From contig NC_043016.1 of the NCBI RefSeq assembly GCF_006345805.1, positions 16,306,001 through 16,370,000 of the forward strand: a stretch of 64,000 nucleotides of DNA, read 5' to 3'. This document shows positions 7,818-61,033 of this stretch, one piece after another (the first letter of the stretch is position 1; each line of letters begins with the position of its first letter). The DNA is from Octopus sinensis. Its lineage: Eukaryota. The notes under the pieces were generated by a model. The model saw nothing but the letters and a program-made list of their open reading frames with translations, was not told the DNA's origin and ran no database searches. A program made the position numbers and the translations under genes.

Positions 7818-8250
7818 TATTGACTCCAGTGGTCAACGAGTAGGTATTTTATCAACCCCGAGAAGATAAGAGACAAAGTCAACTTTGGCGGAAATTGAAC
7901 TCGGAATGTGAGGAACCAAATAATAATAATCCTTTTTACAAAGAAAGCAATTGCTGAAATTTTTGGTAGGAAGAAGCTAGTCGACTACATGAACACCAGT
8001 GCTCAACTAGTAGCTTATTGTATCGATCCCGAAAGAATGACAGGCCAAGTCAGCCTCAGCAGTATTTGAATTCGAAACATATTAACCTACACCATAACGA
8101 TTCTGCCAGCTTGCCATCTTCAATCCTTTCGTGGGAAAGAGCTAGTCGTTTACATCGACCCCAATGTTTAACTGGTGCTTATTTTACCGATCTTGAAAAG
8201 ATGAAAGGCAAAGTCGACCATGGCCGATTTGAACACAAAACGTAAAGAGC
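7818..8250 (-). mobile_element. Three tandem degenerate fragments of tRNA-SINE type 2 (Deu/Nin-like central domain)
   Basis: Repeated variants of ctggtacttattttatcgaccccgaaaggatgaaaggcaaagtcgacctcggcggaatttgaactc at ~7840-7905, ~8005-8075 and ~8170-8235, matching the reverse complement of 60690-60760. Confidence 0.7.
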
Positions 8251-8551
8251 CAAATAATGATGGACTCTCCCGTCGAAGACGACCTATGTATGTTCAGCTT
8301 TCGCCGAACGACCTGCACAAATGATTTGTTTATGGTGATCAAATGTATGCGTTGTATATAAAGCTTATTCTCTCTCCATAAAAATCCGGACAGGTGCATC
8401 GTGTACCACGCGTTAGGTGCCGAAGAGATCGCAAAGCAACCTGAGCTGGGGTGTTTTGCTACAGAACATAACACAGAGCCCGGTCTGGGAATTGAAACCG
8501 CAATCTCGCGATCGTGAGTGCAACACCTTAACCACTAAGCTATGCGTCCTC
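8250..8551 (-). mobile_element. tRNA-derived SINE type 3
   Basis: The minus strand starts gaggacgcaTAGCTTAGTGGttaaggtgttgcactcacgatcgcgagattgcGGTTTCAATTCCC (A and B boxes). A fragment of its tail recurs at ~9895-9990. Confidence 0.75.
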
Positions 8552-8577
8552 AAGCCCCCCCCCCCAATAATAATAAT

Positions 8578-9135
8578 AAATGCCCTGATGCAGTACCAGG
8601 CAGTGGCTCTCATGGCTTCTGATCTTAACTGATTGGAAGTGTTATCATGTACATTGTTTTGTCTTGGTATAAAAGATGGGCTACAGCAAATATTCTGCTC
8701 AATACCACAGATTTGCTTGTCAGTTGTTTGACCTTAACCAGTTGAGCATGTCCCTTAGTGGCTGACGATATGTGCATCTCTGATCACGAGCAGAAGTAGT
8801 GGGGAAGCATCATAGCCATGTGTTGAGAGGGATTCTTTGGGGTTTGAATAATTCACCTCTGGAAACATGGGTGGTTCTTTCAACATCCTTAAACAACCCT
8901 TATTCAGGAACCGCTTGAGCGGGATGGGCTACTCAACCTGAAGAAAATTCTAAGCGGGCCCCACCTGCAAGGTCATGTGCTGTTTATCTTGATATGAGAT
9001 CACCATGTCGCGCACATATGGTTGTGATGCATGTGCCTGGTATACCCTTATCAGACGGGTAGTCATGATGGGTATATTGGGCTTCGTATATTTTACCCCA
9101 GTGTCACTTTGATGGCATGAACTGCTCTCTCACTC
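8578..9135 (+). mobile_element. ~560-bp non-coding interspersed element X, copy 1 (full length)
   Basis: aaatgccctgatgcagtacc ... gcatgaactgctctctcactc. Preceded by (AAT)4, followed by (AAT)n at 9136-9194. Near-identical to six other copies in the window. Confidence 0.9.
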
Positions 9136-9196
<61 letters not shown>

Positions 9197-9339
9197 GATG
9201 AGCTAGCGATACCAATGGGGGAGGTTATGAAGCAGATAGAAGAGACGGGCTATAAGTAGTTGGGGATTTTGCAAATGGATGGTGACAATAGGATCCATGT
9301 AAGAGAAAAATAAAAAAATAAACAACTACAACGATTTAA

Positions 9340-9640
9340 AGTGAGAAATAGGAACGCTGAGGTGAATGAAGAAAGTAGACCAAGTGCACCAATAGTAATT
9401 GGTGCACTTAGAAATAATATCAGCACTCAACTAACAACTTGGTTAAAAATAAAGACTGCTGCATGCGTGAAGGTAGAACACCCCACGAAAATCCGCATTG
9501 GTTGGAACTGCAAGAATTCTCTGCAGGGTTCTTGAAGCATGACCAGTAAACAAGAGTCACCTTAGTCTGCTGGCTGTGGACAGCTGACCACTTTCCATCA
9601 TACCCAACAAAATAAGCTGTAAGTTTTCATTACATAATAC
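9340..9640 (+). mobile_element. R4/Dong-like retrotransposon 3' end (family B)
   Basis: APIVIGAL and LVGTARILCRVLEA* RLE C-terminus. 3' UTR ccagtaaacaagagtcaccttagtctgctggctgtggacagctgac is shared with 28067-28160 and 60060-60145. Confidence 0.75.
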
Positions 9641-9650
9641 TATTAATAAT

Positions 9651-9856
9651 TATTTCAAATTTTGCCACAAGGGCAGCAATTATGGGAAGGGGATGAATCG
9701 ATTACATTGACCCAGTATATGACTGGTACTTATTTTATCAATCCCAAAAGGATGAAAAGCAAAGTTGACCTCAGCGGAGTTTGAACTCAGAACAGAACGG
9801 AGCGACGAGCGAAATACCGCTATGCATTTGGTCTAACGATCCTTCCAGCTCGCCAC
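9651..9856 (-). mobile_element. tRNA-SINE type 2, near complete
   Basis: Head ggtggcgagctgg, B-box gagttcaaactcc, Deu-like cttttcatccttttgggattgataaaataagtaccag, 3' end gcccttgtggcaaaatt. Confidence 0.8.
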
Positions 9857-9989
9857 CATAATAATAAGGATAGGACAAAATGCCGCTAAACAGTTTGCCC
9901 GTATTAACAATAATGGACTTTCCCGTCGAAGACAACGTATAATTGTTCAAATTTTGCCGAACGAACTGCACAAATGATTTGTTTACCGT

Positions 9990-13117: not shown

Positions 13118-13671
13118 GAGTGAGAGAGCAGTTCATGCCATCAAAATGACACTGGGGTAAAATATACGAAGCCCAGTATACCCATCATGACTACCCGTCT
13201 GATAAAGGTACACCAGGCACATGCATCACAACCATATGTGCGCGACATGGTGATCTCATATCAAAATAAACAGCACATGACCTTGCAGGTGGGGCCCAGT
13301 TAGAATTTTCTTCAGATTGAATAGCCCATCCCGCTCAAACGGTCCCTGAATAAGGGTTGTTTAAGGATGTTGAAAGAACCACCCATGTTTCCAGAGGTGA
13401 ATTATTCAAACTCCAAAGAATCCCTCTCAATACATGGCTATGATGCTCCCCCACTACTTCTGCTCGTGATCAGAAATGCACATATCGTCAGCCACTAAGG
13501 GGCATGCTCAACTGGTTAAGGTCAAACAACTGACAAGCAAATCTGTGGTATTGAGCAGAATATTTGCTGTAGCCCATCTTTTATACCAAGACAAAACAAT
13601 GTACATGATAACACTTCCAATCAGTTAAGATCAGAAGCCATGAGAGCCACTGCCTGGTACTGCATCAGGGC

Positions 13672-13675
<4 letters not shown>
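13118..13675 (-). mobile_element. Element X copy 2 (full length)
   Basis: Reverse complement of 8578-9135. (ATT)n on both sides on the plus strand. Confidence 0.9.
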
Positions 13676-13960
<285 letters not shown>

Positions 13961-13961
<1 letters not shown>

Positions 13962-16900
13962 TATATTTGACTTTTGCTTTACATTTGTACAAGTTGGCTC
14001 CAAGTCTCACCCAGAGACCTCAAGAGACAACAAGTTAGAAGTTCATGTTGGTGTTATGCCTAGGGTGCCATATATTTGGTTTTGTACAGAGTGTTGTTCT
14101 AGAGAATGTTTAAGAAACCATAAGAAAATTATGTTTGTTTTATATAATTTGAGATTACATAGAAAGTATTTTGCGTGGGATATGGGCAGTTCCCATGAGC
14201 ACTATCTTTTGAATTTCTGCCATTTTGTGGTTTCCTGGTATCTGAGTTAGGTAGCAATCAGCCCCTTTTGCTATCATTCCTAGGGCACCCATGACAACAT
14301 GTATTGTTTTAGTCTTCAGGTTTCACACTTCGTCAATTTCCAACTAAACATCTTTATACTCAGTTTTTGGTAGATCTTGACGAATACATTTACATCAATT
14401 GAGACAGTCATATCAATGAGGAGGTATGTTCTTTGTCTGAAGTCTTTCAATATGATGTCTGGCCTATTCGCATCTATCTTTCTGTCAGTTTGAACGGCGA
14501 AGTTCCAGTGGAGTGAGATGTGATCATTTTCAAGCACTGGTGGTGGTTTGTGTTCCCACAAGTTTTTATCATGGGACAAGTCCAGGTTTTTGCAAATTAC
14601 CCAGTGAATATAGTGTGCTGCTCTATCATGCCTGTTGAGATACTCTGTAGGCACAAGAAAACTGCACATTGTTAATTCCAGATGTAAAAGTCCACCGTCC
14701 CCCTCTTTTCTTAGCAGGTAAAGTCGTTCTATATCTGCCTTGGGGTGGTGCATTCTATGGATTGTCAACAATTTTTCTGTCAAGATTACATATTTCAGTA
14801 ATTGACCAGTCAATATTACATATTTCAGTAATTGGCCAGTTAATGGTATTGAAATTATAAGTCACGACTGGTATGGCAAAAGTATTGATCGCTTCGATCC
14901 TGTTTCTCGCATTCAGCTCTGTCTTGAGTATTGCTCTTACTCTGCGATAACATCCTCTCCTGATCCTTTCCTTCATCACTGAATGCCTTATTCCGTCCCC
15001 TTCAATTACCCCTAGGTACTTGTAGCTCTCCGCTGGGTCTAACTCTTTTATGACATTCTGCTGGTCGAGGTAAACGTTAGATGTTTCTATCATTTTTCCT
15101 TTGATAAAGGTAGCTTTTGCACATTTATCGAGGCCAAATTGCCTCCTGATGTCATCACTGAATTGCTTAACAACCACTAGTAAGCCTTGTAGTTGTTGGT
15201 CATTTTTTGCAAAGAGCTTTAAATCATCCATATAAATGAGATGATTTATATTTTTATCAAACATTTTATAACCGTATTGTACATCATTGAGCAATTTCGA
15301 GAGCGGTATTAAGGCTAGACAAAAGAGGTATGGTGATAGTGAGTCACCCTGGAAAATGCCACATGAAATTTTTACATCACCAGCATTTAGAGATTCATTG
15401 TCACTGTTCAAAGTTAGTGTGGTTCTCCATGATCTCATACGTACAGACAAGAAGTTTCGCAGAGTAGGTGCTATTTTATATATATCCAGACATTTCTTAA
15501 TCCAGTTGTGTGGTAGACTATCAAGAGCTTTTTTATAGTATATCCAGGCTGTCGACAAGTTTTTGTGCCGTTTGTGATAATATTCTAAGATCATCTTATT
15601 GATGAGTAGCTTATCTTTACAACCATAGGATCCACGTTTACATCCTTTTTGCTCATTACGAAATATGCTGCTTTCTATTAAAAAACTATAGGTATATTCA
15701 TTCAGGACAGATGTTAGCGTTTTACACATTGTTGTTAAGTAGGTTACGGGTCTATAGTTTTTGGTTCATTTGTTTCTTCATTTTTTGGAAGTAGGAATGT
15801 TACACCATTAACTAGCCAAGAGGGAGTCATACTAGGTTGTTGCAAAACATTATTGTAAAGTTTTGTTATCAGTTCATGGCTTTCTGGGAAGGCGTTCAAC
15901 CAGAAGTTAGGAATTGTATCCTTTCCTGGAGACTTCTATTTGCTTGATTTCCTGAGAGCAGATCTTACAACCTCTACCTTGATACCTTCCCCGCCCACAT
16001 TTGCTCTTCTAAGGAGTCTAAGTCTGTAGATATTCTATCAATTCATGAGGCCTTTTCGTTGTGTGTTTTTTCTTCTGCCCAAATTTTATTCCAAAATTCC
16101 TGCACTTCTTCTTTTGATGGGGCAGACTTTACTGTAACTGGTATTTTCCCCTATCTTCCTGTAAAAATTCCTTGGGTTATTTTCAAAAATAACCCAAGGA
16201 ATTTTTACAGGAACATGTTGTTGCCCTTGAAGAATCTAACGCGCTTTTCATACCTTGCTATGCAGGTAGCTTTAGTACTTACCTTTGCCTGATGGTTTCT
16301 ATGGTGGTATCAAAGTCAAATATGGCTTTCATATTATATTTTTTGTTTAATTTTCGGGTTTTTGTAGGTTGGATAGTCTTGTCAAGCATAAGGTTTTTTT
16401 TAATCCTTTAGCATTTAAACAGGTCAAATCTGGCCCCAAATTTCCTACATGTTTGATGTTTAAACTGGCCATATTTAGTCTTTCACACCTACTTAACAAT
16501 GTCATTATAAAAATAAAAATTTGAAATCTCAAAAAGTATGATTACAAGATAATACTGGATAAATTCAAAACAATGCAATAAATAAACATTACATTTGACA
16601 AAGTAATCTGAACACTAAAGGGTTAAACATTCTATGTCAGTCCTAAGTAGCTGAGTTTGGTGTTGAATACGCTCTTGCTAAAAAGGCTTTTTGTAGGAAT
16701 GTTGTCGTTTTCTAATCTTTTCACCACTTAGAATCGTTGAGATTTTCGCGGATGCATAGTTCAAGTGGTTGAGATCTGTAATATCAACATCATTAGCTGA
16801 AATTATATGCTTAAGTGCAAGGCGGATTTTACCAATTATTTTTAGGCTTTGGTTAGAATTACGGGTTTTTGGAAGAGTGTTGCATTCATTCATTCTGATT

Positions 16901-17702
16901 TCTTTAATTTTCAGCCATTCAATCATGATTTGATTTTTTACATCCTGTAGTTCTGTTGGGTCAATTTCTGTGTGGCTTTCTTCATCTATTTGATTTTCAT
17001 CTGTCTTAGTGTTTATGGTTGTTTCACAAAGTATTTCACTTTGCCTATCGGTTACATTAACTCTTTCAATCCTTCCTTCGTTTTCATCAGCCCTGGGCTG
17101 GTCTATAATTATTTCCTCTGTATTATCTTCTTTAGCTGCAGTTTCGATCCTTTCATCCCTTATTGATTGTTTAATTTGGTCAGTCTCTACTTCAGTTAGT
17201 AATTTCTTTTTCATAATGTTTTTTCGGACGTTGGCAAGTTTACTACCGTCTATGCAGGGTCTTACTTCAAGGTGCTTCTGTCTCCAGTTTAAGTAGGTTT
17301 GTACAGTATTAGATTTATTTGTGAGAAATACATGGCATGGTAGAAAGCCGTAAGAACTTCTTTATTATCTCTCCTAGACCATTTTTCATTCTTTTTCTTT
17401 TGGTTATTTGATGAAGAGCATGGATGGCAAACTACTGGAATATTCCGGTTGTGGGGTACTTCCAGCTCCTGTGTTTCGGGAAGATTTGAACCAGTAGCTG
17501 ATTTTTCGTGTCTAATTTGGTTAATCATTCGAGTACGTGGCCCTTGGTGTTCTGGTTAACGACCACTTCGGTTTGTAATTTGTTTCGTTATCACCGAGGC
17601 ATGACGAACTAGGACGTTGACATTAGGGGATGGATCTATCTGTTTAGGGTTAATTTTCCGACAAAACACCGTCTCCGAGTTCTCTGCATGTAAACATTGC
17701 TC

Positions 17703-17703
<1 letters not shown>
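13961..17703 (-). mobile_element. R4/Dong-like non-LTR retrotransposon, near full length, degenerate (family C)
   Basis: ORF 14755-15729 has QKGCKRGSYGCKDKLLI, WIYYKKALDSLPH, GIFQGDSLSPYLF, HLIYMDDLKLF, YKYLG. ORF 14316-14813 has HHPKADIERLY, YLNRHD, LHWNFAVQTDRKIDANRPDII..LIDM (restriction-like endonuclease). N-terminal ORFs at 16678-17214. (AAT)n flanks both ends on the sense strand. Confidence 0.9.
16404..16622. mobile_element. piggyBac-like MITE with TTAA target duplication, nested in the family C element
   Basis: TTAA(16400-16403) tcctttagcatt ... aacactaaaggg TTAA(16623-16626): imperfect TIRs starting CCTTTAG. Confidence 0.7.
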
Positions 17704-18444: not shown

Positions 18445-21400
18445 CAGTAGTTTTATTTTTATAGCGTGCTTTCACTTCACTACCGAGCACAGCTCTGTGT
18501 GCCTTGGGTATGTGCTGTGATTTGTTGTGATGCTCTGATGGTTATTGTATGGAAAGTGTTCTGCGTAGGATGTGTGCAGTGCCTAGTAGTGCAATTTTCT
18601 GTATGTTATATGTGTTTGTAAGTCCTGGTGTTTTTGTTATGTATTTGTCTGAATATTTTTTTATCATGCCTAATGCACCTACTATGATAGGAATTGTTTC
18701 TGTTTTCAGATTCCACATTCTAGTTACCTCTATTTCCAGGTCTTTGTATTTTGAGAGTTTCTCCATTTCTTTTAGAGACACGTTGTCATCAGCCGGTATT
18801 GATACATCAATTAGAAAGCATTTTTTTTCTTCATGATCTCTGACAACTATATCTGTCTGTTGGCCTTAATTTCTCTATCTGTGTGTATCGGCATATCCAG
18901 AGTATGGTTGCTTTCTCGTTTTCTGTGACCTTTTCTGGTGTGTGCCTATACCATCTTTTTTCTGTTGTTATTCCATAATGTTGGCATAGCTTCCAGTGTA
19001 TGTAGGTTCCAACTCTGTCATGTCTGTGAATATATTCCTTCTTAGCCAAGACTGGGCAGCCAGAGATAATATGATTTATTGTTTCTTGTCCATCTCCACA
19101 TATTCTGCAGTTACTTGTTGTAATTTCTGGTGGGGAGGCTTTGGTCTAGTGCTGCAATTAAAAATCCCTCTGTTTCTGCTTTGAGTCCTGAGCTTCTCAA
19201 ACATTCCTGGGATTTTTCTTTGTCTATTTCTTTTGCATTTAGTTTAGTCCAGTATTTACCGTCGAGGGGCTTTTCTTGCCATCGTTTTATCATGTTCGTT
19301 GCTGTTCTATGTTTTAGTTTGGATTCCATTTTTTTATAGCTTTTGTTGTTTCTTCATCTTCTTCTTCTTCTTCATGTTTATTAGGTGGTATGATTTCTTG
19401 TTTGTATTTGTCAGCTTCCTTAAATACTGAGAACAGTTTTTTGTTTTGCTCGTGTTTTGCCGCTATCTGGATCAGTTTTCCTTCCTTCTGAAGTAGATAT
19501 TTTTGCAGTCCTATGGTGGTTATTTTATAGTAGTTTTCCAGCTGTATAAGGCCTCTACCACCTTCTATACGTTGTATATTAGTCTTTCTATGTCAGATTT
19601 TGGGTGATGCATCCTAGATCCTGTCATTATTTTTCTTGTTTTCCTATCTATTTTGGTCAGTTCATTTCGTGTCCAGTTAAGGATATTGTAGCTGTAACTT
19701 ATAACTGGGACAGCTAAAGTGTTGATACCTATTATCTTGTTTTTAGCATTGACTCTGTGTTTAGTATTGATCTAACTCGTCTATAATATTCTTTTTTTAT
19801 TTTCTCTTTCATTTGTGTGTGTTGTGTCTTATCTAGTTCATGGATTCCTAAATATTTGTAAGTTTGGCTTTGGTCTAATTCTTTTATTTCATTGGTTTTA
19901 TCTAGTGTGATGTTGTTACTCTTAACTAGTTTTCCTCTTTTCAGGGTTACTTTGGCGCATTTTTCTAATCCAAATTTCATATCTATTTCTTTGGTAAATC
20001 CATGAACTGTCTTTAATAGTGTTTCCAGCTGTTTGTCATTTGCAGCGTATAGTTTTAGGTCATCCATATATAAAAGGTGGCTGATCGTTTTGCCGTAACA
20101 TTTATATCCGCATCCAGTTATATTTAGCATATCAGATAGAGGTGACAGTGCTAAGCAGAAAAGGAGTGGAGAGAGCGTGTCTCCCTGGAATATTCCTCTT
20201 CTAATGGGGATGTCTTTGGTTTTCATGAGTCCCTCTTTTGTTTGGAGCTGTAGGACTGTTTGCCATTTATTCATAGAGTGCTCTATGAATTTTATGATTG
20301 TTGGTGCTACTTTGTTAATGGCTAGTGTTTCGAGGATCCATGTGTGGGGGATGCTATCAAACGCCTTTTTGTAGTCAATCCAGGCCATACTGAGGCCTTC
20401 TTCTTTCTGTGGCTGTCTTCAGTTATGGCTTTATAATCATTAGTTGATCTTTACAGCCATATGAGCCTTTGCGGCATCCTTTCTGCTCTTCTGGAACAGT
20501 TTGTTTTCGTCCAGGTGCTTGTTCAGCCTTTGTGATATCATTGCAGTAATGCCTGAACATAGTAGGGAGGCAGGTTATTGGTCTGTAGTTTTCTGGTTTT
20601 TCTGTTTCATTTGATTTGGGAATTAAGATGGTTTTCCCCTTCGTGAGCCATTCAGGCATTGTCTCTGGCTCTGCTAGTACGTTGTTAAAGTTTTCAGCCA
20701 GCTTTTTGTGCATTCCTGTTAGATATTTCAACCAGAAGTCGGGGATCTTGTCATGCCCAGGTGCCTTCCAGTTGCTTAGTCTTTGCAGTGCCTGGGTGAC
20801 CTCTTCAGTTGTTATGGGGGTCCAAAGTTGTTCAGATGCCGAGTTTGTTATTCTGATACTCCTTTTTTTTGGTGGTTCGTTCGCCGACCATATTTCTCCC
20901 AGAATTCTTCCAATTCTTCTGCCGTTGGTGCTGCAGTGACTCTATTTTATTTTTTCCCAGTTCTTGGTAGAACTTTTTGGGGTTAGAGTTGAACTTTTTG
21001 TTTTCTTCAAAGAAGCGTTGGCGTTTCTTGTTACGGCGGATCCTTTGTGCTTTGGCAAGGATATCTTGCTTCAGCTTTTCTTTTATTTCAGGCAAATCTT
21101 TCTCTGTGATGTTATATTTGCGGAGTATTTTTGTTCTCTTTTTGTTGCTCAGTAGCGTTGATTGTTTGCTGATTTCATTAAGAATCGACAGGTCTTTTCT
21201 AATTTTTTTTATTTTGCGGGTTTGGGTGAGTATCCAGTTTCTTTTGTGGCTGCAGTGGCTGCTGCGTATATTAGGTTATTTAGCTCAGTGATATCACTTT
21301 TTTTTGATTCAGTGGCTATCAGTTCAGTGACGGCTAGGTTTATGCTGTTTATAATAGGTGTTGTTATTTTGTTTATTTTGATTCTTGGGAGGTATGGTCG

Positions 21401-21698
21401 GTGGTCCATTTTGAGCTCTGTGGTTTTCAGTTCTTTGATTATTTTATTTTTTATATTATCATAGTCATTAGGCTCCCCTTCGTTGTTTACATCGTGTTTG
21501 TTGGGAATGTTGCGTTTGTCTTCGTGTTTTACAGTTTCAGTGTTTATATTATTGGGCATTGTTGTGTGGCTTCTATCTACATTTTCCTGTGTATGTTTTC
21601 TTTTAGGTGTTCTATTCTATTCTGATATTTTTTTTTGTGTTGAGAATGTATCTTCGTACGTTAGCTAATTTATTAGGGTTCATTGCTGTATCCAAGTC
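18445..21698 (-). mobile_element. R4/Dong-like non-LTR retrotransposon, near full length, frameshifted (family A)
   Basis: ORFs 20423-20731 (NYRPITCLPT, QKGCRKGSYGCKDQLMI), 19732-20388 (MAWIDYKKAFDSIPH, RGIFQGDTLSPLLF, HLLYMDDLKLYA), 19111-19329 (LRSSGLKAETEGFLIAA), 18831-19049 (EYIHRHD) and 18542-18781 (EKLSKYKDL, IPIIVGALG, QKIALLGTAHILR). (AAT)n at both ends. Confidence 0.93.
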
Positions 21699-21786
21699 TA
21701 TTATTATTATTATTATTATTACTATTATTATTATTAATATTATTATTATTATTATTATTATTATATTATTATTATTATTATTATTA

Positions 21787-21834: not shown

Positions 21835-22613
21835 TTATGTTTGACTTATGCTTTAAATTTGTACAAGTTAGCTCCAAGTCTCACCCAGAGACCTCAAGAG
21901 ACAACAAGTTGGAAGTTCATGTTGGTGTTATGCCTAGGGTGCCATATATTTGGTTTTGTACATAGTGTTGTTCTAGAGAATGTTTAAGAAACCATAAGAA
22001 AATGCCGTTCTTTAATATGTTGGCCTGGTAGTTCCTTGTAGGTAGGCATTGATCTTGAGCAATTCAGATCTTAAGCAAGAGGCCATTAGCCATTGATGAG
22101 TCAGGGCTTTGTCAACATCGGCATTATTAGCTCTCTTTAGCTATTAGCCATTGAGAGGTTTTTCTTGCCATTTATCAGTCAGAATATCTAAGGCAGCAGT
22201 TTTAGCACGGGTTTTCATGCGCTTAGCTTTTTCTGCGCTTTTTTTTCGTATGTCTAATTCCGGAATTTGTTGTATTCGGAATTCACTTAGATATTCCTTT
22301 GCCTGTTTTGTTACTGAGTATGATGCTTTCTTGTTTTCATGTTTTGAGACAAGCTTTAACATCCAGTCCTCAGAGTTTTTCAGGTAGGTGTCTAGGCAAA
22401 TTGTAGCAATTTTCATTGTTATTGCCAGTTGTAAAAGTCCACGGCCTCCCTCTTTTCTTGGCAGATAAAGCCGTTCTATATCTGCCTTAGGGTGGTGCAT
22501 TCTATGGATTGTCAACAGTTTTCTTATTTTTCTGTCAAGATTACATTGACCAGTTAACGATATTGAAACCGTAAGTCACGACTGGTATGGCTAAAGTATT
22601 GATCGCTTCGGTC
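21835..22613 (-). mobile_element. R4/Dong-like family C, 5'-truncated and internally deleted
   Basis: 3' UTR at 21835-22000 is near-identical to 13961-14130. ORF 22144-22515 has HHPKADIERLYLPRKEGGRGLL..WQEKPL. (AAT)n tail at 21699-21834. Confidence 0.85.
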
Positions 22614-22958: not shown

Positions 22959-24198
22959 CGAGGAGTGTTCATTAACAATTTACTCTGACCCACTTCCCAA
23001 GGACTGGGATAAACGAAACTTGCTATAATTATTAGTACTTCTCCACATAATCACCACTAATGATGACACACTTCTCACATTGCTTTATGCAGCTGGGAAG
23101 AGCTCGTCTGTAGAAGTCGGTAGGTTGCGGCTGGAGCCATGATTTTACCTCGGAAATAAGTTCATCACCGTCCGAAAAGGTGCGAGGCTGGGAGAGTAAG
23201 GGAAATTAGGAAGGATTTCATAGCCACGGGAGTATACTTTCATCTGGGAAACATGCGCATTGTGAACTGGGGCGTTGTCCTGGTAGAGGCGGACTCCTTT
23301 GGTCAACATGCCACGCCTCTCTGTTTTGAGGGCTTTTTGCAGTTTCTGCAGCAGAGAAGCATAACATGCTCCGTTAACTGCGGTGCCCTTTGCCAGAATA
23401 ACCATCACCACTACTCCACGCTGGCCCCAAAAGACTGTGAGGATCACCTTGCCTGCTGAGGGTTGGACACGGACTTTCTTTGGAGGTGGTGAGTTATCAT
23501 GCTTCAATTGCTTCGACTGGACTTTCGTCTCAGGATCATAGTGAGGGACCGAGGTTTCATCCTGTATGATGAGTCTGTCGAAAATGTTCTCCTCGTTTTC
23601 TTGGCATGTTGCCAAAAGTTTCTGGAAGCAATTGAGTCGTTCCTGCTTTTGAAAAGGTGCGAGCATCAGAGGAATCCATCAAGCAGACAACTTCCACATG
23701 TGCAAATTGTCATGAGGGATTTTTCCTATTGACCCTACACTTATTTTCACTTCTTGGGATAGTTGCCGAATGGTTATGCGGCGATTCTCCAAAATGGCGG
23801 CTTCCACTTTATGGCTGGTATCATAGATGGCGGAATGTGGTCGTCCAGGAATAGGAGCAGTTTCCACCGATGTACGATCACATTCTAACTGGAAATGCCT
23901 ATGCTTGACTACGTCGTATGATGGTACATCGTCACAACAAACTTCTTTCATCTTAACGAAAGTCTCTTTCGGTGTACGACCTTTCAAGTATAAGAACCTG
24001 ATCACTGATCTGCATTCAACTGCCTCCATTATAACATCTTTGTCCACTTCAGCAGCCGTAAAAGACAAACGGATACTAGTGGAAAGTTGCAATTTACAAT
24101 GTGACATGCAGAGACATATATGATTATACTGGTACAAGTTCCATTTCCTGCAATAACCGGAAGTGGGTCAGGGGAAAATCTTTAATGAACACTCCTCG
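22959..24198 (-). mobile_element. Full-length mariner (Tc1/mariner) DNA transposon with disrupted transposase
   Basis: ~39-bp TIRs cgaggagtgttcattaa...tgacccacttcc at both ends, TA at 22957-22958 and 24199-24200. ORFs 23679-24137 (CRSVIRFLYLKG, PGRP, RRITIRQL) and 23145-23666 (IQDETSV, SAGKVILTVFW, LYQDNAPVH, FPYSPSLAP). Confidence 0.93.
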
Positions 24199-27060: not shown

Positions 27061-27096
27061 TTAATAATAATGATAATAATAATAATAATAATAATA

Positions 27097-27140
<44 letters not shown>

Positions 27141-27169
27141 TAATAATAATAATAATAATAATAATGATA

Positions 27170-27230
<61 letters not shown>

Positions 27231-27268
27231 TATTATTATTATTATATTATTGATTATTATTATTAGAT
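27061..27268. repeat. (AAT)n switching to (ATT)n (self-complementary microsatellite)
   Basis: Polarity switch at ~27170. Confidence 0.9.
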
Positions 27269-27821
27269 GAGTGAGAGAGCAGTGCATGCCACCAAAGTGA
27301 CACTGGGGTAAAATATACGAAGCCCAGTATACCCATCATGACTACCTGTCCGATGAGGGTTCACCAGGTACATGCATCACAACTGTATGTGTTTGACATA
27401 GTGGTCTCGTATTAAGATAAACAGCACATGACCTTGCAGGTGGGGTCCAGTTAGAATTTTCTTCCGGTTGAGTAGCCCATCCCGCTCAAACGGTCCCTGA
27501 ATAAGGGTTGTTTAAGGATGTTGAAAAAACCACCCATGTTCCAGAGGTGAACTATTCAAACCCCAAAGAATCCCTCTCAACACATGGCTATGATGCTCCC
27601 CCACTACTTCTGCTCGTGATCAGAGATGCACATATCGTCAGCCACAAAGGGACATGCTCAACTGGTTATGGTCAAACAACTGACAAGCAAATCTGTGGTA
27701 TTGAGCAGAATATTGCTGTAGCCCATTTATAGCAAGACAAAACAATGTACATGATAACACTTCCAATCAGTTAAGATCAGAAGCCATGAGAACCACTGCT
27801 TGGTACTGCATCAGGGCATTT
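27269..27821 (-). mobile_element. Element X copy 3 (full length)
   Basis: Same termini as copies 1 and 2. The 3' flank is (AAT)n and the 5' flank is (GAA)n on the sense strand. Confidence 0.9.
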
Positions 27822-27999: not shown

Positions 28000-28066
28000 C
28001 CCTCCTCCTCCTCCTCCTCATCATCATCATTGTTGTTTGTTGTATTATTATTATTATTATTATTAT
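27822..28066. repeat. Compound trinucleotide microsatellite (CTT)-(CAT)-(CCT)-(ATT)
   Basis: Direct reading. Confidence 0.9.
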
Positions 28067-29302
28067 GCGATGAAAACTCACTTCTTATTTTACTGGGTTT
28101 GATGGAAAGTGTCTGCTGTCCACAGCCAGCAGACTAAACAGACACTTGTTTACTAGTCATACTTCAAGAACCCTGCGAAGAATTCTTGCAGTTCCAAGCA
28201 ATGCTGAATTTTGTAAGTGTTCTACCTTCACATTTGCACCGATCTTTTTCAGCCATGTTAGTAGTTCAGTGCTGATACTTCAAAGTGCACCAATTACTAT
28301 TCGTACCACGCCTACTCTCCTCATGGACCACGACCTTCGTATTTCCCACGACATAGTTGTTTTTGTTCTCTTCTTCTTTCACATTCATCCTGATGTCACC
28401 GGGGCAAGCTATATCGATTATCATACATGTTCTTTCTTTTTTATTCACCACAACAATGTCCGGCTTCCGATGTCTGGTCAGGTGATCACACTGGATCATT
28501 GCATCCCACAGGATTTTGTGAAAATTCTCATTTTCGGTGACTCCTTCTGGGGTTTGTTCATACAACGTCTTTGCTCTTTGTAGGCCGTGATTTCGACAGA
28601 GCTTCCAATGGATCATTCTTGCCACATTGTCATAGCGTCTTTTATATTCGCGTTGTGCCAATTTCGGGCATTCGCTAACGATGTGCCATACCGTTTCATC
28701 CTCTCACCACACATTCCGCATTTGTCGCTATCGGTAGTAGGAGTGGCGATATGGTAAGTAGTTTTCTTACTAAACACATGGTTCCGGGTTCAGTCCGACT
28801 GCGTGGCACCTTGGGCAAGTGTCTTCTACTATAGCCTCGGGCTGACCAAAGCCTTGTGAGTGGATTTGGTAGACGGAAACTGAAAGAAGCCCGTCGTATA
28901 TATGTATATATTTGTGTGTGTGTGTGTGTATGTTTGTGTATCTGTGTTTGTCCCCCAACATCACTTGACAACCGATGCTGGTGTGTTTACGTCCCCGTAA
29001 CTTAGCGGTGCGGCAAAAGAGACCGATAGAATAAGTACTAGACTTACAAACAATAAGTCCCGGGGTCGAGTTGCTCAACTAAAGGCGGTGCTCCAGCATG
29101 GCTGCAGTCAAATGACTGAAACAAGTAAAAGAGTAAAGGAGGTAGTGTTGACTATTCTGCACTTCCTGTAATTGGTGCTTAACGCCTGTTCCTGGGCTGC
29201 GCATGTGTGTGCTTCTGTCTTTATATTCAGGTCACTCCTTCTCATCCATAGCCACTGGTCCTCTCTATCTGTTCACAACTCTTTCAAACTGACCGTACAT
29301 GT
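28067..29302 (-). mobile_element. R4/Dong-like 3' portion (family B) split by a SINE
   Basis: ORF 28266-28661 (EYKRRYD, ILWDAMIQCDH..RKPDIVV..IIDIACPGD). Knuckle CGMCGE..HIVSEC near 28700. Continuation LWMRRSDLNIKTEAHTCAAQEQAL at 29147-29300. Confidence 0.85.
28739..29140 (+). mobile_element. tRNA-SINE type 1, full length, with 6-bp target site duplication
   Basis: Head aggagtggcgatatggtaag, B-box-like gggttcagtcc, internal (TA)/(TG), tail ctccagcatggctgcagtcaaatgactgaaacaagtaaaag. GGTAGT at 28733-28738 and 29141-29146. Confidence 0.9.
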
Positions 29303-29419
29303 ACTCCTCCTCCTCCTCCTCCTCCTCCTCCTCCTCCTATTCTTCTTCTTCTTCTTCTTCTTCTTCTTCTTCTTCTTTTTCTTCTTCTTCTTCTTCTTCT
29401 TCTTCTTCTTCTTCTTCTT

Positions 29420-30618
29420 CAGTAGTTATATTTTTAAAGCGTGTTTTTACTTCACTACCGAGCGCAGCTCTGTGTGCCTTGGGTATGTGCTGTGGTTTGC
29501 TGTGATGCTCTTATGGTTACCGTATTGAAGTGTTTTGCGTAGGATGTGTGCAGTGCCCAGTAGTGCAATTTTCTGTATGTTATATGTGTTTGTAAGTCCT
29601 GGTGTTTTGGTTATGTATTTGTCTGAATATTTTTTATCATTCCTAATGCGCCCTCTATGATAGGGATTGTTTCTGTTTTCAGATTCCACATTCGAGTTAC
29701 CTCTATTTCCAGGTCTTTGTATTTTGAAAGTTTCTCCATTTCTTTTAGAGAAACGTTGTCATCTGCTGGTATTGATACATCAATTAGAAAGCATTTTTTT
29801 CTTCATGATCTCTGACGACTATATCTGGTCTGTTGGCCTTAATTTCTCTATCTGTGTGTATCGGCATATCCCATAGTATGGTTGTTTTTTCGTTTTCTGT
29901 GACCTTTTCTGGTGTGTGCCTATACCATCTTTTTTCTGTTGTTATTCCATAATGTTGGCATAGCTTCCAATGTATGTAGGTTCCAACTCTGTCATGTCTG
30001 TGAATATATTCCTTCTTAGCCAGGACTGGGCAGATAGAGATAATATGATTTATTGTTTCTTGTCCATCTCCACATATTCTGCAGTTACTTGTAATATTTC
30101 TTTTCATTACATGTTTTTGGTAATTTCTGGTAGGGAGGCTTTGGTCTTGTGCTGCAATTAAAAATCCCTCTGTTTCTGCTTTGAGTCCTGAGCTTCTCAA
30201 CCATTGCTGGGATTTTTCTTTGTCTATTTCTTTTGCGTTTAGTTTAGTCCAGTATTTACCATGAAGGGGCTTTTCTTGCCATCGTTTTATCATGGTTCGT
30301 TGCTGTTCTATTTTTAGTTTGGATTTCATAGCTTTTGTTGTTTCTTCTTCTTCTTCTTCTTCTTCTTCTTCTTCTTCTTCTTCTTCTTCTTCTTCTTCTT
30401 CTTCTTCTTCTTCTTCTTCTTCTTCTTCTTCTTCTTCTTCTCTTCTTCTTCTCTTTTTCTTCTTCTCTTCTTCTTCTCTTCTTCTTCTTCTTCTTCTTCT
30501 TCTTCTTCTTCTTCTTTCTTCTTCTTCTTCTTCTTCATGTTTATTAGGTGGTATGATTTCTTGTTTGTATTTGTCAGCTTCCTTAAATACTGAGAACAGT
30601 TTTTTGCTTTGCTTGTGT
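29420..30618 (-). mobile_element. R4/Dong-like family A, 5'-truncated, with expanded internal (GAA)n at 30342-30536
   Basis: ORF 29784-30329 (WLRSSGLKAETEGFLIAAQDQ, CRICGDGQETINHIISIC, ILWDMPIHTDREIKANRPDIVV). 3' UTR as at 18445-18540. The 3' flank is (GAA)/(GAG)n and the 5' flank is (AAT)n. Confidence 0.92.
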
Positions 30619-30798: not shown

Positions 30799-31082
30799 GA
30801 GTGAGAAAGCATGCATGCCATCAAGGTGACACTGGGGTAAAATATACGAAGCCCAGTATACCCATCACGACTACCCGTCTGGTAAGGGTACACTAGGACC
30901 ATGTATCACTAACATATGTGCGCGACATGATGATCTCATATCAAGATAAACAGCACAAAATCTTGTAGGTGGGGCTCAGTTAGAATTTTCTTCTGATCGA
31001 GTAGCCCATCCCGCTCAAAAGGTCCCTGAATAAGGGTTGTTTAAGAATGTTGAACGAAACACCCATGTTTCCAGAGGTGAAT
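30799..31082 (-). mobile_element. Element X copy 4 (5'-truncated)
   Basis: Retains the shared 3' end next to (ATT)n 30619-30798 and stops after ~285 bp. Confidence 0.85.
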
Positions 31083-31084
31083 TA

Positions 31085-31254: not shown

Positions 31255-31665
31255 TGAAAGCAGGCAATAACAAATCACTAAACTTTTCAAGTAGTGCCCT
31301 CTCCTGTGACCCAAAGAGACAACACTACTCCCCTTAGAATGCGAGCTGTACCCAACAATATTGTCTTCTGGATCACTTAGAGCCTGACAGTAACTCCAAT
31401 ATTCTTAATATGTTTTTCAAAGTCCTTGGAAACTGCTCCTAATGCTCCAATTACCACCGGTATCACCATTACTTTCCTCTTGGCCCATAACTTTTCTATC
31501 TCGTCCCGCAGTGGATGGTATTTCTCAATCTTTTCTGTTTCCTTACATTTCACCCTCGAATCGCCAGATATTGCAACATCTATTATATTTGCTTCTTCTT
31601 CATCTTTATGGATGATCACGATATCTAACCGTCTCGCCTCTATCACTAACAATATGGCTTATACT
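31255..31665 (-). mobile_element. R4/Dong-like 3' fragment (family I)
   Basis: ORF 31377-31652 (RRLDIVII..IIDVAISGD..EKIEKYHPL..VIPVVIGALG), then IQKTILLGTARIL. Confidence 0.85.
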
Positions 31666-31841
<176 letters not shown>

Positions 31842-48888: not shown

Positions 48889-50478
48889 CCAGATGGAATT
48901 CAAGGCTACTGGATCAAAAGATTTGATGAATGTCATGCACGAATAGCTGCGCAACTCAACACCTTTTTAAATGTCGACCAAGCAACACCAGAGTGGTTGA
49001 CATTGAGTAGGACAGTGCTGTGTTTGAAAAACATCGAAAAAGGCAGTACGGTAGACAATTATAGGCCGATCTCCTGTTTGCCATTTATGTGGAAGTTATT
49101 GACTGGAATACTCGCAGAGTCAATGTACGAACATCTGGAAAAAAATGGAGTCCAGCCACATGAGCAGAAGGGTTGCAAGCGTAAGTGCAGCGGTACCATG
49201 GATCAACAGAAACTGCAAGAGGAGGAAAAGTAACTTAGCCATGTCATGGATCGACTATCGTAGGGCGTACGATAGGATCCCACATTCTTGGATTATGGAA
49301 TGTATGAACCTATTTGGTATTGCTTCGAATGTTGAGCGATTGCTTGGAAAAAGTATGGCGAATTGGAGGACGGATCTGACAGCATACGGAAGAAGTTTAG
49401 GGACAGTAGAAATTAGGAGGGGCATCTTCCAAGGGGACTGCCTGCCCCCACTGATCTTTGTACTGTGCTTGACACCACTAACACTGATTCTGAAGAAAGC
49501 AAAGGGTGGATGTGTATTCAGAAGCCGCCAACAAAAAGTCAACCATTTGTTATTCATGGATGACCTCAAACTTTATGATAAAGATGAAGCTCAAGTCAGT
49601 TCCCTCATTGATACGGTGTATACTTTCAGTGCTTATATCAGAATGGTGTGTTAGTATTGAAGAGAGGCAAAATCAAATGTATGGACTGGTTAACGGTACC
49701 GTCGGGGGGATGTTATGAAGCAGATAGAAGAAACGGGCTATAAGTACATGGGGATCTTGGAAATGGATAAATTGGAGAAAGAAATGACAGAAAAATTTAA
49801 GGTGGAGTACTTACGCAGACTGTGACTGGTCCTTAAGTTGAAATTAAAGGAACAGAATAAGATCAAAGCTATCAACACCTGGGCGGTTTCACTCTTTAGA
49901 TATGGAGCAGGGGTAATTGCATGGAAACTAGACGAACTAAAACGCTTAGACAGAAAGACAAGGAAGTTGCTTACTAGATGTGGGTCACTCCACTCAGACA
50001 TAGACAGACTGTATATACCAAGACAAAGAGGAGGAAGAGGACTTATTGGATGCGAACACAGCACTAGAGCAGAAGAAAACAACATAGCATGGTATGTGAA
50101 AATGCCACAGAACCCCTGTTATTAGAAGTAAGAAGGTCAGGCTTGTGTAGGATGAAAGATTACAAAGATAAAGCACTATACAAGAAATTGAAAATGAATG
50201 AAACTGAAAATAGGTGGGTAAAGAAAGAATTCATGGTCAAGAAAAGAATTCATGTTGAAGATACGACAGACAGAGGCTCTAATCTGTGCTAATCAAGAGC
50301 AAGCATTAAGAACGTTGGGCTCAATCCCATTGAAACTTTGATTGATGTCTTGCAAAAAGCAGCCTTATTGGGCACAGTGCACTTCTTAAGGAAAGTATTA
50401 ACTGTCTGAAGTCCTTGCTGTGACTTGACAAGCGACTAAAGACTCCGGTGTATTGTTACCTACACTGTGTTACGAAGG
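48889..50478 (+). mobile_element. R4/Dong-like RT region joined to a family E 3' end (internal deletion)
   Basis: [68 protein letters not shown] and IDRLYIPRQRGGRGL. 3' UTR at 50400-50478 matches 46750-46827. Confidence 0.9.
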
Positions 50479-60147: not shown

Positions 60148-60598
60148 TCTTGGTATAAAAGATGGGCTACAGCAAATATTCTGCTCAATACCACAGATTT
60201 GCTTGTCAGTTGTTTGACCTTAACCAGTTGAGCACGTCCCTTAGTTGCTAACGATATGTGCATCTCTGATCATGTGCAGAAGTAGTGGGGGAGCATCAAA
60301 GCCATGTGTTGTGAGGGGTTCTTTGAGGTTTGGATAATACATCTCTGGAAACAACCCTTATTCAGGGACCTTTCGAGCGGGATAGGCTACTCAACCTGAA
60401 GAAAATTCTAACTGGATCCCACTTGGAAGGTCCTGCGCTGTTTATCTTGACATGAGACCAGTATGTCGCGCTCATATGGTTGTGATGCATGTGCCTGGTG
60501 TACCCTTATCAGGCGGGTAGTCATGATGGGTATACTGGGCTTCGTATATTTGTATCCTGGTATTTGTTACTCTGATGGCATGCGCTGCTCTCTCACTC
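60148..60598 (+). mobile_element. Element X copy 7 (5'-truncated, more diverged)
   Basis: Matches 8660-9135 and ends ctctcactc plus (AAT)n. Confidence 0.85.
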
Positions 60599-60845: not shown

Positions 60846-61033
60846 AAATAATAATATAATAATAATAATAAAATAATAATAATAATAATAATAATAAAAT
60901 AATATAATGATAATGATGATGATGATGAGATGATGATGATAATAATAATAATAATAATAATAATATAATAATAATAATAATAATAATGACGATGATGATG
61001 ATGATGATGATGATGATGATAATAATAATGATG

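What the first reader, a model, noticed from the sequence alone, without database searches (positions are those of the whole stretch)
8578..9135. Candidate non-autonomous, (AAT)n-targeting retroposon (element X) that may hijack R4/Dong machinery
Seen: 7 copies in 64 kb (8578, 13118, 27269, 30799, 40096, 47886, 60148). All keep the same 3' end (ctctcactc, or a variant of it in copy 6) followed by AAT- or AAC-type repeats. Three share an identical 5' end (aaatgccctgatgcag) and four are 5'-truncated. I see no long ORF, no TIRs and no convincing Pol III A/B boxes. About 63 nt from the 3' end is a hairpin ccc-tt-atca-gac[GGGTA]gtc-a-tgat-ggg (9045-9072), whose 5-nt loop resembles the loop in the Dong-like 3' UTR hairpins. 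Known: a fixed 3' end with variable 5' truncation is the signature of target-primed reverse transcription, and Dong of Bombyx (R4 clade) targets TAA repeats. Inference: X is a SINE-like parasite of the R4/Dong RT/RLE protein that mimics its RNA recognition hairpin and inherits its microsatellite targeting. I do not know of this partnership being described.
Basis: partly seen in the sequence, partly recalled or inferred. Interest (0 to 1): 0.82.

Follow-up and report, generated by a model that had tools for sequence, protein, structure and literature searches.

The report
Octopus microsatellite-targeting non-coding retroposon
A 558-base non-coding mobile element in an octopus genome copies itself into (AAT)n microsatellites, very probably by borrowing the enzyme of neighbouring Dong/R4-type retrotransposons, a partnership I could not find described but could not prove here.

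Summary
BLAST finds exactly seven copies of a 558-bp unit, X. Three are full length with the same 5' end and four are 5'-truncated. All end in CTCTCACTC (or a variant) followed by (AAT)n in one polarity. X has no ORF, no terminal inverted repeats, and no tRNA or Rfam match. It resembles nothing else in the window.

The window is octopus DNA, crowded with restriction-like-endonuclease (RLE) LINEs of the Dong/R4 type. These LINEs also end directly in same-polarity (AAT)n.

Three of seven X copies have perfect (AAT)n on the 5' side as well (p about 8e-5). The other four sit in or at microsatellite tails or ends of Dong-like copies. So X targets the repeat rather than merely carrying a tail.

It has the same architecture and position as a covariation-supported hairpin in the Dong-like 3' UTRs. 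However, it has no sequence homology to them, and covariance models built from the Dong hairpins do not find it.

Verdict: X is a non-autonomous TPRT retroposon that targets (AAT)n. Dong dependence is likely. Hairpin mimicry is plausible but unproven. No further copies could be retrieved, and Repbase/Dfam could not be checked.

The parts
8578..9135 (+). X copy 1, full length (558 bp, reference)
   Evidence: Flanked by (AAT)4 on the 5' side and (AAT)20 on the 3' side.
13118..13675 (-). X copy 2, full length, 97% identical
   Evidence: Lies inside the (AAT)n tail of Dong-like copy D1a, with (AAT)96 upstream and (AAT)15 downstream.
27269..27821 (-). X copy 3, full length, 93% identical
   Evidence: The 5' flank is the (AAG)n end of the compound trinucleotide tail of Dong-like D5a. 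The 3' flank is (AAT)32.
40096..40635 (-). X copy 5, starts at nt 17, 97% identical
   Evidence: The 5' flank is the 1.3-kb (AAT)n array at 40634-41959. The 3' flank is (AAT)13.
60148..60598 (+). X copy 7, starts at nt 85, 85% identical
   Evidence: The 5' junction lies about 10 nt before the 3' end of a Dong-like D5 copy. The 3' flank is (AAT)5.
30799..31084 (-). X copy 4, starts at nt 272, 89% identical
   Evidence: The 5' flank is a degenerate AAT tract after a Dong-like 3' UTR (RLE ORF at 31380-31658). The 3' flank is (AAT)60.
47885..48098 (-). X copy 6, starts at nt 342, 90% identical
   Evidence: Joined head-to-head with the 5'-truncated Dong-like D2 copy at 48099-48625(+). The 3' flank is (AAC)4(AAT)n.
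9035..9082 (+). Long bulged hairpin of X: 13 bp, UU bulge, 7 bp, loop GGGUA. Its base lies 53 nt (9083-9135) from the (AAT)n junction.
   Evidence: Free energy -24.7 kcal/mol, z = -4.9.
9136..9195 (+). (AAT)20 directly 3' of copy 1. This is the target remainder and/or the tail.
8566..8577 (+). (AAT)4 directly 5' of copy 1. This is the upstream remainder of the target.
13961..17703 (-). Dong-like LINE copy D1a (candidate source of RT/RLE). (AAT)n lies on both sides.
   Evidence: RVT_1; best PDB hits are R2 proteins.
18445..21699 (-). Dong-like LINE copy D4a with RT, CCHC and RLE motifs. (AAT)n lies on both sides.
46250..46827 (+). Dong-like D3 3' part: RLE ORF and 3' UTR, ending in (AAT)20.
28065..28703 (-). 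Dong-like D5a 3' part. Its hairpin is at 28107-28147 and it ends in (AAT)7.
9196..9637 (+). 5'-truncated Dong-like D5 copy, directly after the (AAT)20 of X copy 1.
46747..46784 (+). Example of the covarying Dong-like 3' UTR hairpin. Others are at 13993-14031(-), 21867-21905(-), 42471-42508(+), 50398-50435(+), 39703-39741(+), 44154-44192(+) and 45754-45792(+).

Best explanation
X is a family of about 558-bp non-coding, non-autonomous non-LTR retroposons in an octopus genome.

Shown:
- X forms a discrete unit with a fixed 3' end and 5' truncations, which is the mark of target-primed reverse transcription (TPRT).
- X sits in (AAT)n arrays in a single polarity, often with (AAT)n on both sides.

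Inferred:
- X RNA is copied in trans by the reverse transcriptase / restriction-like endonuclease protein of co-resident Dong/R4-type LINEs.
- That protein nicks the bottom strand of (TAA)n/(AAT)n repeats and primes cDNA synthesis at the 3' end of the bound RNA.

More speculative:
- The protein is recruited by the 20-bp bulged hairpin about 50 nt from X's 3' end.
- This hairpin copies the shape of the Dong 3' UTR hairpin (lower stem, 2-nt 5' bulge, 6-7-bp upper stem, 5-nt loop closed by C-G) but not its sequence.

How X RNA is transcribed and how its exact 5' end is made is unknown. No Pol III head and no ribozyme were detected.
For: The family and its ends are documented. X has no ORF and no RNA family or tRNA match.

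Targeting:
- The 3' flank is (AAT)n in the same polarity in 7 of 7 copies.
- The 5' flank is perfect same-polarity (AAT)>=4 in 3 of 7 copies, against 1.34% of window positions (binomial p = 8e-5).
- Copy 4 follows a degenerate AAT tract after a Dong-like 3' UTR.
- Copy 7 starts about 10 nt inside the 3' end of a D5 copy.
- Copy 3 lies in the compound microsatellite tail of D5a.

Candidate partner:
- The window's LINE fragments have RVT_1 domains.
- Their best solved relatives are R2 proteins (E = 4e-13).
- They carry a C-terminal CCHC and PD..D..EK..KY motif. This motif aligns weakly with the R2 RLE (E = 0.16).
- At least six families end directly in same-polarity (AAT)n.
- Several copies have (AAT)n on both sides: D1a, D4a, D7a and the D5 fragment.
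- Where the junction is unambiguous, X and the Dong-like families share the junction phase N|AATAAT.

Organism and literature:
- The window is octopus (Octopus vulgaris protein at 87% identity; 88% nucleotide identity to O. vulgaris chromosome OX597814.1).
- Dong elements target (TAA)n in Bombyx, Anopheles and the snail Biomphalaria (PMC3812793).
- O. vulgaris has 5 recently active Dong-R4 families with 1129 recent insertions (PMC13282606).

Hairpin:
- MFE structures of the X, D5a, D3a, D1a and D2b hairpins line up bracket for bracket.
- The Dong-like hairpin covaries. 84-89% of cells are paired, against 26-48% with slid partners, and 10 of 16 pairs change on both sides.
- A descriptor with the Dong-like dimensions matches 6 X copies, 5 Dong-like 3' UTRs and only 8 other non-microsatellite sites in 128 kb.
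- In shuffled sequence, matches of at least 15 bp occur at 1.8e-6 per nt. None of at least 20 bp occurred in 1.7 Mb.
- The hairpin base lies 53 nt (9083-9135) from the junction in X and about 37-45 nt in the Dong-like families.
Against: - X shows no sequence similarity to any Dong-like 3' or 5' end in the window or in the O. vulgaris locus L001.
- Covariance models R1 and R2, built from the Dong hairpins, do not report X at E<=10. They also miss the bona fide Dong-like D2b hairpin. D5a appears only with R1, at a non-significant 10.4 bits (E = 3.3). Their reach across families is therefore poor.
- The structural descriptor was written after I had seen X, so its p-values are post hoc.
- Only seven copies, all from one AAT-rich and Dong-rich window, could be studied. 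No further copies were retrievable.
- Co-location with Dong copies may reflect nothing more than a shared target.
- One Dong-like copy (29420-30618) has (AAT)n on its 5' side but (AAG)n on its 3' side. The origin of the 3' arrays (target or RT-made tail) is therefore not fully settled.
- Clade assignment of the LINEs to R4/Dong rests on the RLE architecture, the (TAA)n association and published octopus annotation. It does not rest on an RT phylogeny.
Confidence: 0.6

Rival explanations
1. X descends from a Dong-type LINE rather than mimicking one. It would be a short internally deleted element (SIDE), or the 3' module of an autonomous Dong family that is not present in this window. Its hairpin would then be that family's own 3' UTR hairpin.
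For: Dong-like families differ so much in 3' UTR sequence that even true members (D5, D2) are not significantly detected by models built from other families. D5a reaches only E = 3.3 with R1, and D2b is missed. An unsampled family with X's hairpin is therefore possible. R2 SIDEs set the precedent (PMC3414825). X's hairpin dimensions are closest to those of D5 and D2b.
Against: Neither end of X resembles any Dong-like copy in the window, in L001 or in L002-L012. None of the seven copies continues upstream into coding sequence. Three copies share one exact 5' end.
Confidence: 0.2
2. X is mobilised by another LINE, for example an APE-type CR1, Nimb/I, RTE or Tx1 family whose copies end in an (AAT)n tail. 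The (AAT)n after X would then be an RT-made tail, and the link with Dong copies would be a coincidence of AT-rich, repeat-rich DNA.
For: Many stringent-type LINE/SINE pairs carry microsatellite tails. Known mollusc SINE partners are CR1, CR1-Zenon, L2 and Nimb (PMC11481361). Three of the seven X copies have no AAT at the 5' junction. One Dong-like copy has different arrays on its two sides.
Against: The 5' flank is enriched for AAT (p = 8e-5). No target-site duplications are seen around the copies with non-AAT 5' flanks. No APE-type LINE end was found next to (AAT)n in the window, and every coding 3' end at (AAT)n is RLE-type.
Confidence: 0.12
3. X is a DNA-level element, for example a non-autonomous Helitron inserting at A|T inside AAT repeats, or it was spread by segmental duplication of microsatellite-rich DNA.
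For: Helitrons target AT dinucleotides and some families sit in microsatellites (PMC3812793). X has a small hairpin about 8 nt before its 3' end.
Against: X has no 5' TC or 3' CTRR termini and no terminal inverted repeats. Four of the seven copies are 5'-truncated at different points with an intact 3' end. Flanks beyond the microsatellites are unrelated.
Confidence: 0.03

Closest known systems
R2 SIDEs (short internally deleted elements of the rDNA-specific RLE retrotransposon R2; Eickbush & Eickbush 2012, PMC3414825)
   Same: Both are non-coding, non-autonomous elements that insert at the same specific target as an RLE-type LINE. Both are presumed to use that LINE's protein through a structured 3' end.
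   Different: SIDEs are recognisably derived from R2 (or R1) at both ends and keep its 5' self-cleaving ribozyme. X shares no sequence with any Dong-like copy available and shows no ribozyme. X's target is a microsatellite, not the 28S gene.
Dong and related R4-clade LINEs, (TAA)n-specific (Xiong & Eickbush 1993; Kojima & Fujiwara 2004, as cited in PMC3812793 and PMC4640811)
   Same: Both use the same target repeat, the same polarity and the same junction phase. Both show a fixed 3' end with 5' truncation.
   Different: Dong is autonomous and carries RT and RLE. X is 558 bp with no ORF.
SINEU / Tx1-Mar and other SINEs that inherit the target specificity of a site-specific LINE (Kojima 2015, PMC4494074)
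   Same: Both are short non-autonomous retroposons whose insertion sites mirror those of a target-specific LINE.
   Different: SINEU has an snRNA-derived head and a LINE-derived tail, and its partner is an APE-type Tx1. X has no recognisable small-RNA head and no LINE-derived sequence, and its presumed partner is RLE-type.
Classical tRNA-derived SINEs of molluscs and cephalopods
   Same: Both are under 700 bp, end in a microsatellite and occur in high copy number.
   Different: X has no tRNA, 5S or 7SL head and no A/B boxes at proper spacing. Known mollusc partners are CR1, CR1-Zenon, L2 and Nimb (PMC11481361).

Membership tests
Non-autonomous non-LTR retroposon (TPRT-mobilised) | Fixed 3' end with variable 5' truncation among copies | tested here: met
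   There are seven copies. Four are truncated, at nt 17, 85, 272 and 342. All keep the 3' end.
Non-autonomous non-LTR retroposon (TPRT-mobilised) | No coding capacity of its own | tested here: met
   The longest stop-free stretch inside X is about 60 codons. No protein homologue was found.
Target-specific ((TAA)n/(AAT)n) retroposon | Target repeat on both sides, in one polarity, more often than chance | tested here: met
   The 3' flank is (AAT)n in 7 of 7 copies. The 5' flank is perfect AAT in 3 of 7, against 1.34% expected (p = 8e-5). The sample is small and comes from one window.
SINE (strict sense) | 5' head derived from tRNA, 5S, 7SL or snRNA, with an internal Pol III promoter | tested here: not met
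   ARAGORN found nothing. Rfam found nothing at gathering threshold and only noise at E<=10. An A-box-like GGCAGTGG lies 9 nt from a poor B-box-like motif, which is the wrong spacing.
SINE (strict sense) | 3' tail homologous to the 3' end of the partner LINE | tested here: not met
   Searches (blastn, word size 7, against the X-masked window; other loci) found no similarity. Only LINE copies in the window and in 11 of the 12 fetched loci could be compared (L003 was a bacterial chance hit).
SIDE (internally deleted derivative of the partner LINE) | Both ends collinear with the 5' and 3' ends of an autonomous element | tested here: inconclusive
   X does not match D1-D7 or L001.
Dong/R4 clade (for the presumed partner LINEs) | RT followed by a C-terminal CCHC motif and a restriction-like endonuclease, with no APE domain | tested here: met
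   RVT_1 domains. zf-RVT is weak. The best solved relatives are R2 proteins. The RLE motif is visible and aligns to the R2 RLE at E = 0.16. The RLE domain has hundreds of homologues.
Dong/R4 clade (for the presumed partner LINEs) | Insertion into (TAA)n microsatellites | tested here: met
   D1a, D4a, D7a and the D5 fragment have same-polarity (AAT)n on both sides.
Dong/R4 clade (for the presumed partner LINEs) | RT phylogeny groups with Dong/R4/Rex6 rather than R2, NeSL, CRE or HERO | not tested
   No reference RT set was on hand. Published RepeatMasker-based annotation calls the abundant octopus RLE LINEs Dong-R4 (PMC13282606, PMC8967140).
Helitron (non-autonomous) | 5' TC and 3' CTRR termini, a hairpin 10-12 nt from the 3' end, insertion between A and T | tested here: not met
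   X starts AAATGCC and ends CACTC. Truncations are at the 5' end.
Dong 3' UTR hairpin RNA motif | Match to a covariance model built from Dong-like hairpins | tested here: not met
   R1 and R2 do not report X at E<=10. The Dong-like D5 and D2b hairpins are not significantly detected either.
Dong 3' UTR hairpin RNA motif | Same architecture (lower stem, 2-nt 5' bulge, 6-7-bp upper stem, 5-nt loop closed by C-G) at 35-55 nt from the junction | tested here: met
   The descriptor was fixed after X had been seen, so this is a post hoc test.

The most novel reading that the evidence does not exclude
X would be the first described parasite of Dong/R4-clade RLE retrotransposons. It would be a microsatellite-specific non-autonomous retroposon that recruits the LINE protein by imitating only the shape of a conserved bulged 3' UTR hairpin. 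It would share no sequence with its host LINE and would have no Pol III head. This would imply that Dong-type RT recognises RNA shape, and that a template of about 560 nt or less is enough for insertion aimed at (TAA)n.
Probability: 0.3. Interest if true: 0.62.

Novelty: new variant of a known kind. Interest (0 to 1): 0.48.

Why it matters
Non-autonomous partners are well documented for APE-type LINEs. Among RLE-type, site-specific LINEs, they are documented essentially only for R2 (the SIDEs).

A Dong-dependent, microsatellite-targeted passenger would have three consequences:
- It would help explain how (AAT)n arrays and their interruptions spread in cephalopod genomes, where Dong-R4 is among the most active LINE groups.
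- It would provide a natural minimal template for studying what RNA feature an R4/Dong protein recognises.
- It would be relevant to efforts (my own knowledge: R2-based transgene insertion) to use RLE retrotransposon proteins for targeted insertion at repeated "safe" sites.

If X is merely an unannotated SIDE of an unsampled Dong family, it is a routine addition to a repeat library.

Tried and rejected
Attempts to find more copies of X all failed:
- A protein search with X's longest antisense ORF found nothing.
- A scan of metagenome contigs with a 22-nt X motif gave one chance hit in a bacterial gene.
- Scans of genome contigs and viral contigs gave none.
- Exact look-up of seven window ORFs showed none are in the collection, so other places in the same assembly could not be fetched.
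- The 11 eukaryotic loci fetched through Dong-like proteins contain no X. These are O. vulgaris OX597814.1 and three ENA assemblies of another species. The twelfth locus (L003) was the bacterial chance hit.

Tests of sequence relatedness and known RNA classes were negative:
- Sensitive blastn of X against the X-masked window found nothing better than E = 0.28. This argues against a SIDE of any local Dong copy.
- Rfam at E<=10 on copy 1 with its flanks gave three noise hits. It found no HDV-like or hammerhead ribozyme and no tRNA, 5S, 7SL or snRNA.
- A manual check of the first 100 nt for an HDV-like P1/P2/P3 layout did not fit.

Tests on the hairpin gave limited information:
- Among X copies there are 0 of 49 double changes. 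In the long hairpin, 9 single changes keep the pair and 5 break it, which is no better than neutral.
- Region-wise identity shows the hairpin slightly better kept than the 3' tail in the two oldest copies (45/48 against 44/58 and 42/53). This is too weak to use.
- CM R1 (5 sequences) and CM R2 (9 sequences) find new Dong-like hairpins but not X.
- MAFFT could not align the D5 and D2b hairpins with the others, so no all-family model was built.

Other checks:
- Pfam scans of other window ORFs looked for an APE-type LINE with an AAT tail. They found none, only a mariner transposase remnant.
- A literature search for a Dong/R4 non-autonomous partner found none in the held library.

Full report
**Observation.**
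- Three copies are full length: 8578-9135(+), 13118-13675(-) and 27269-27821(-).
- Four are 5'-truncated, starting at nt 17, 85, 272 and 342.
- Identity to copy 1 ranges from 97% down to 85%, so the family has been active over some time.
- Oriented flanks show one 3' end, CTCTCACTC (CTCGCTCA in copy 6). It is followed in all seven copies by (AAT)n in the element's own polarity.
- The three full-length copies share one 5' end, AAATGCCCTGATGCAG, and have unrelated DNA upstream.
- X has no ORF and no terminal inverted repeats.
- It has no tRNA-like part and no Rfam match, even at E<=10.

**Context.** The window is octopus DNA.
- A reverse-transcriptase ORF at 14758-15765(-) is 87% identical to an Octopus vulgaris protein.
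- The surrounding element is 88% identical in DNA to a stretch of O. vulgaris chromosome OX597814.1.
- The window is crowded with decayed LINE copies that have RVT_1 domains.
- The best solved relatives of these LINEs are R2 retrotransposon proteins (E = 4e-13).
- Their C-terminal parts carry a CCHC knuckle and a PD..D..EK..KY restriction-like-endonuclease motif. This motif aligns weakly with the R2 endonuclease and has hundreds of homologues across animals.
- Listing everything that lies just upstream of each (AAT)n array shows at least six such LINE families, which I call D1-D7. Their short 3' UTRs end directly in same-polarity (AAT)n.
- Several copies have (AAT)n on both sides. These are D1a 13961-17703, D4a 18445-21699, a 190-bp D7 fragment at 39585-39773, and a D5 fragment at 9196-9637.
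- This is the behaviour described for Dong, which targets (TAA)n in Bombyx, Anopheles and the snail Biomphalaria (PMC3812793).
- Published octopus repeat annotation counts Dong-R4 among the most active LINEs, with 5 families and 1129 recent insertions in O. vulgaris (PMC13282606).
- I did not run an RT phylogeny, so "Dong/R4-type" rests on architecture, target and literature.

**Target or tail?** A 3' microsatellite alone could be an RT-made tail.
- Only 1.34% of positions on the two strands of this AAT-rich window are preceded by 12 nt of perfect same-polarity AAT.
- Three of seven X 5' junctions are preceded in this way (binomial p = 8e-5).
- The other four are not in random DNA either:
  - Copy 4 follows a degenerate AAT tract behind a Dong-like 3' UTR.
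  - Copy 7 begins about 10 nt inside the 3' end of a D5 copy.
  - Copy 3 lies at the (AAG)n end of the compound trinucleotide tail of D5a.
  - Copy 6 is fused head-to-head to a 5'-truncated D2 copy.
- No ordinary target-site duplications are visible.
- I conclude that X integrates into (AAT)n arrays, with the variable 5' junctions typical of R2-like integration.
- One caution remains. A D4-type copy (29420-30618) has (AAT)60 on its 5' side but (AAG)26 on its 3' side. Not every 3' array here is therefore a simple remainder of the target.

**What X is not.**
- Sensitive blastn of X against the window with X masked finds nothing (best E = 0.28).
- None of the fetched loci holds X or anything like it beyond one 22-nt chance match in the bacterial contig L003.
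- X is thus not an internally deleted copy of any Dong-like element I could see.
- It is not a strict SINE, because it has no small-RNA head.
- It does not have Helitron termini.

**The hairpin.**
It consists of 13 bp, a UU bulge on the 5' side, 7 bp with a 1-nt bulge on the 3' side, and the loop GGGUA (-24.7 kcal/mol, z = -4.9).
- Among the seven X copies there is no compensatory change. That says nothing either way, because the copies are close relatives decaying neutrally.
- Folding the last 120 nt of each Dong-like family shows that each has a hairpin with the same plan. The plan is a lower stem, a 2-nt bulge on the 5' side (UG, UA or UC), a 6-7-bp upper stem that sometimes carries a 1-nt 3' bulge, and a 5-nt loop closed by C-G.
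- The base of this hairpin lies 37-45 nt from the (AAT)n junction in the Dong-like families and 53 nt (9083-9135) in X.
- The MFE brackets of X, D5a, D3a, D1a and D2b line up.
- For one group of families, including copies from another species (L002, L004), the hairpin covaries. 84-89% of cells are paired, against 26-48% with slid partners, and 10 of 16 pairs change on both sides. The Dong-like hairpin is therefore very probably functional.
- A descriptor with those dimensions matches 6 X copies, 5 Dong-like UTRs and 8 other non-microsatellite sites in 128 kb.
- In shuffled sequence, matches of at least 15 bp occur at about 2e-6 per nt, and none of at least 20 bp were seen in 1.7 Mb.
- Against this, two covariance models built from the Dong hairpins recover all members and several new ones but not X. 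They also miss the true Dong-like D2b hairpin. D5a reaches only a non-significant 10.4 bits (E = 3.3) with R1.
- My descriptor was fixed after I had seen X, so its statistics are post hoc.
- The resemblance is therefore one of shape and position, not of sequence. It fits either mimicry or descent from an unsampled family.

**Mechanism proposed.**
- Shown: X is a discrete non-coding unit with TPRT-type truncations, and it inserts in one polarity into (AAT)n.
- Inferred: the Dong-type RT/RLE protein nicks the bottom strand of the repeat. The junction phase N|AATAAT is shared by X and by the Dong-like families with unambiguous junctions. The protein then reverse-transcribes bound X RNA from its 3' end.
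- Speculative: binding is through the bulged hairpin.
- Unknown: how X RNA is made. I found no Pol III boxes at proper spacing and no ribozyme at the 5' end, unlike R2 SIDEs (PMC3414825).

**Comparison and novelty.**
- The closest known things are R2 SIDEs (non-autonomous, same target as an RLE LINE) and SINEU/Tx1 (a SINE that inherits the target of a site-specific LINE, PMC4494074).
- X differs from both in three ways. It has no recognisable LINE-derived sequence, it has no small-RNA head, and it targets a microsatellite.
- Known mollusc SINE partners are CR1, CR1-Zenon, L2 and Nimb (PMC11481361).
- I found no report of a Dong/R4 passenger in the held literature. I could not query Repbase or Dfam.
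- The curated O. vulgaris library lists hundreds of unclassified SINE families among the recently active elements (893; PMC13282606), and X may be among them.
- I rate X a new variant of a known kind, of moderate interest.

**Limits.** The study rests on seven copies from one window. No genome-wide flanks, empty sites, transcripts or RT phylogeny were available.

Noticed in passing
window 13993-14031(-), 21867-21905(-), 46747-46784(+), 42471-42508(+), 50398-50435(+), 39703-39741(+), 44154-44192(+), 45754-45792(+); L001 11916-11944; L002 12155-12185: A bulged hairpin with real covariation lies in the 3' UTRs of the Dong-like LINEs, 37-45 nt before the (AAT)n junction. It is conserved between octopus and another species' assemblies. 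It is probably the RNA element their RT recognises.
   Followed up: partly
window 30342-30536 and 52162-52722 (compare 19358-19372, minus strand): The large (AAG)n arrays are expansions of a short internal (AAG)5 coding tract of the D4-type Dong-like ORF. They are not independent microsatellites.
   Followed up: partly
window 29304-30618 (-): A D4-type Dong-like copy has (AAT)60 on its 5' side but (AAG)26(AGG)12 on its 3' side. Its sister copy at 18445-21699 ends in (AAT)n. The 3' array is therefore not always the remainder of the target. This is unexplained.
   Followed up: no
window 47885-48625: X copy 6 (minus strand) and a 5'-truncated Dong-like D2 copy (plus strand) are joined head-to-head at their truncation points, with microsatellite tails pointing outwards. 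This resembles a twin-priming product made from two different RNAs.
   Followed up: no
window 31670-31799 and 27062-27265: Palindromic microsatellite junctions, (TTA)32(TAA)12 and (TAA)37(ATT)32, with nothing between the arrays.
   Followed up: no
window 39585-39773: A 190-bp unit lies between two (AAT)n arrays and carries a Dong-like (D7) hairpin. It is either an extremely 5'-truncated Dong copy or another short passenger. A 75%-identical relative is at 44036-44214.
   Followed up: partly
window 8430-8565 (-): A tRNA-derived SINE with clear A and B boxes, preceded by a run of 11 G (C11 on the plus strand), lies directly upstream of X copy 1.
   Followed up: no
window 60620-60860(+), 9640-9857(-), 39850-40040(-), 7818-7914(-), 8154-8243(-): A second tRNA-like SINE family has the head GGCGAGCTGGCAGAA. 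At least one copy (60620-60860) ends directly in an (AAT)n array, so X may not be the only short element associated with this repeat.
   Followed up: partly
window 23148-24167 (-): Remnants of a mariner-type transposase (Transposase_1 and the HTH domain of Mos1).
   Followed up: no
window 40634-41959: A 1.3-kb (AAT)n array of about 447 units lies directly upstream of X copy 5. The element at its far end (41960-42300, minus strand) is unidentified.
   Followed up: no
window 38565-38817: A tandem repeat with a 103-bp unit, 2.5 copies, 83% match.
   Followed up: no
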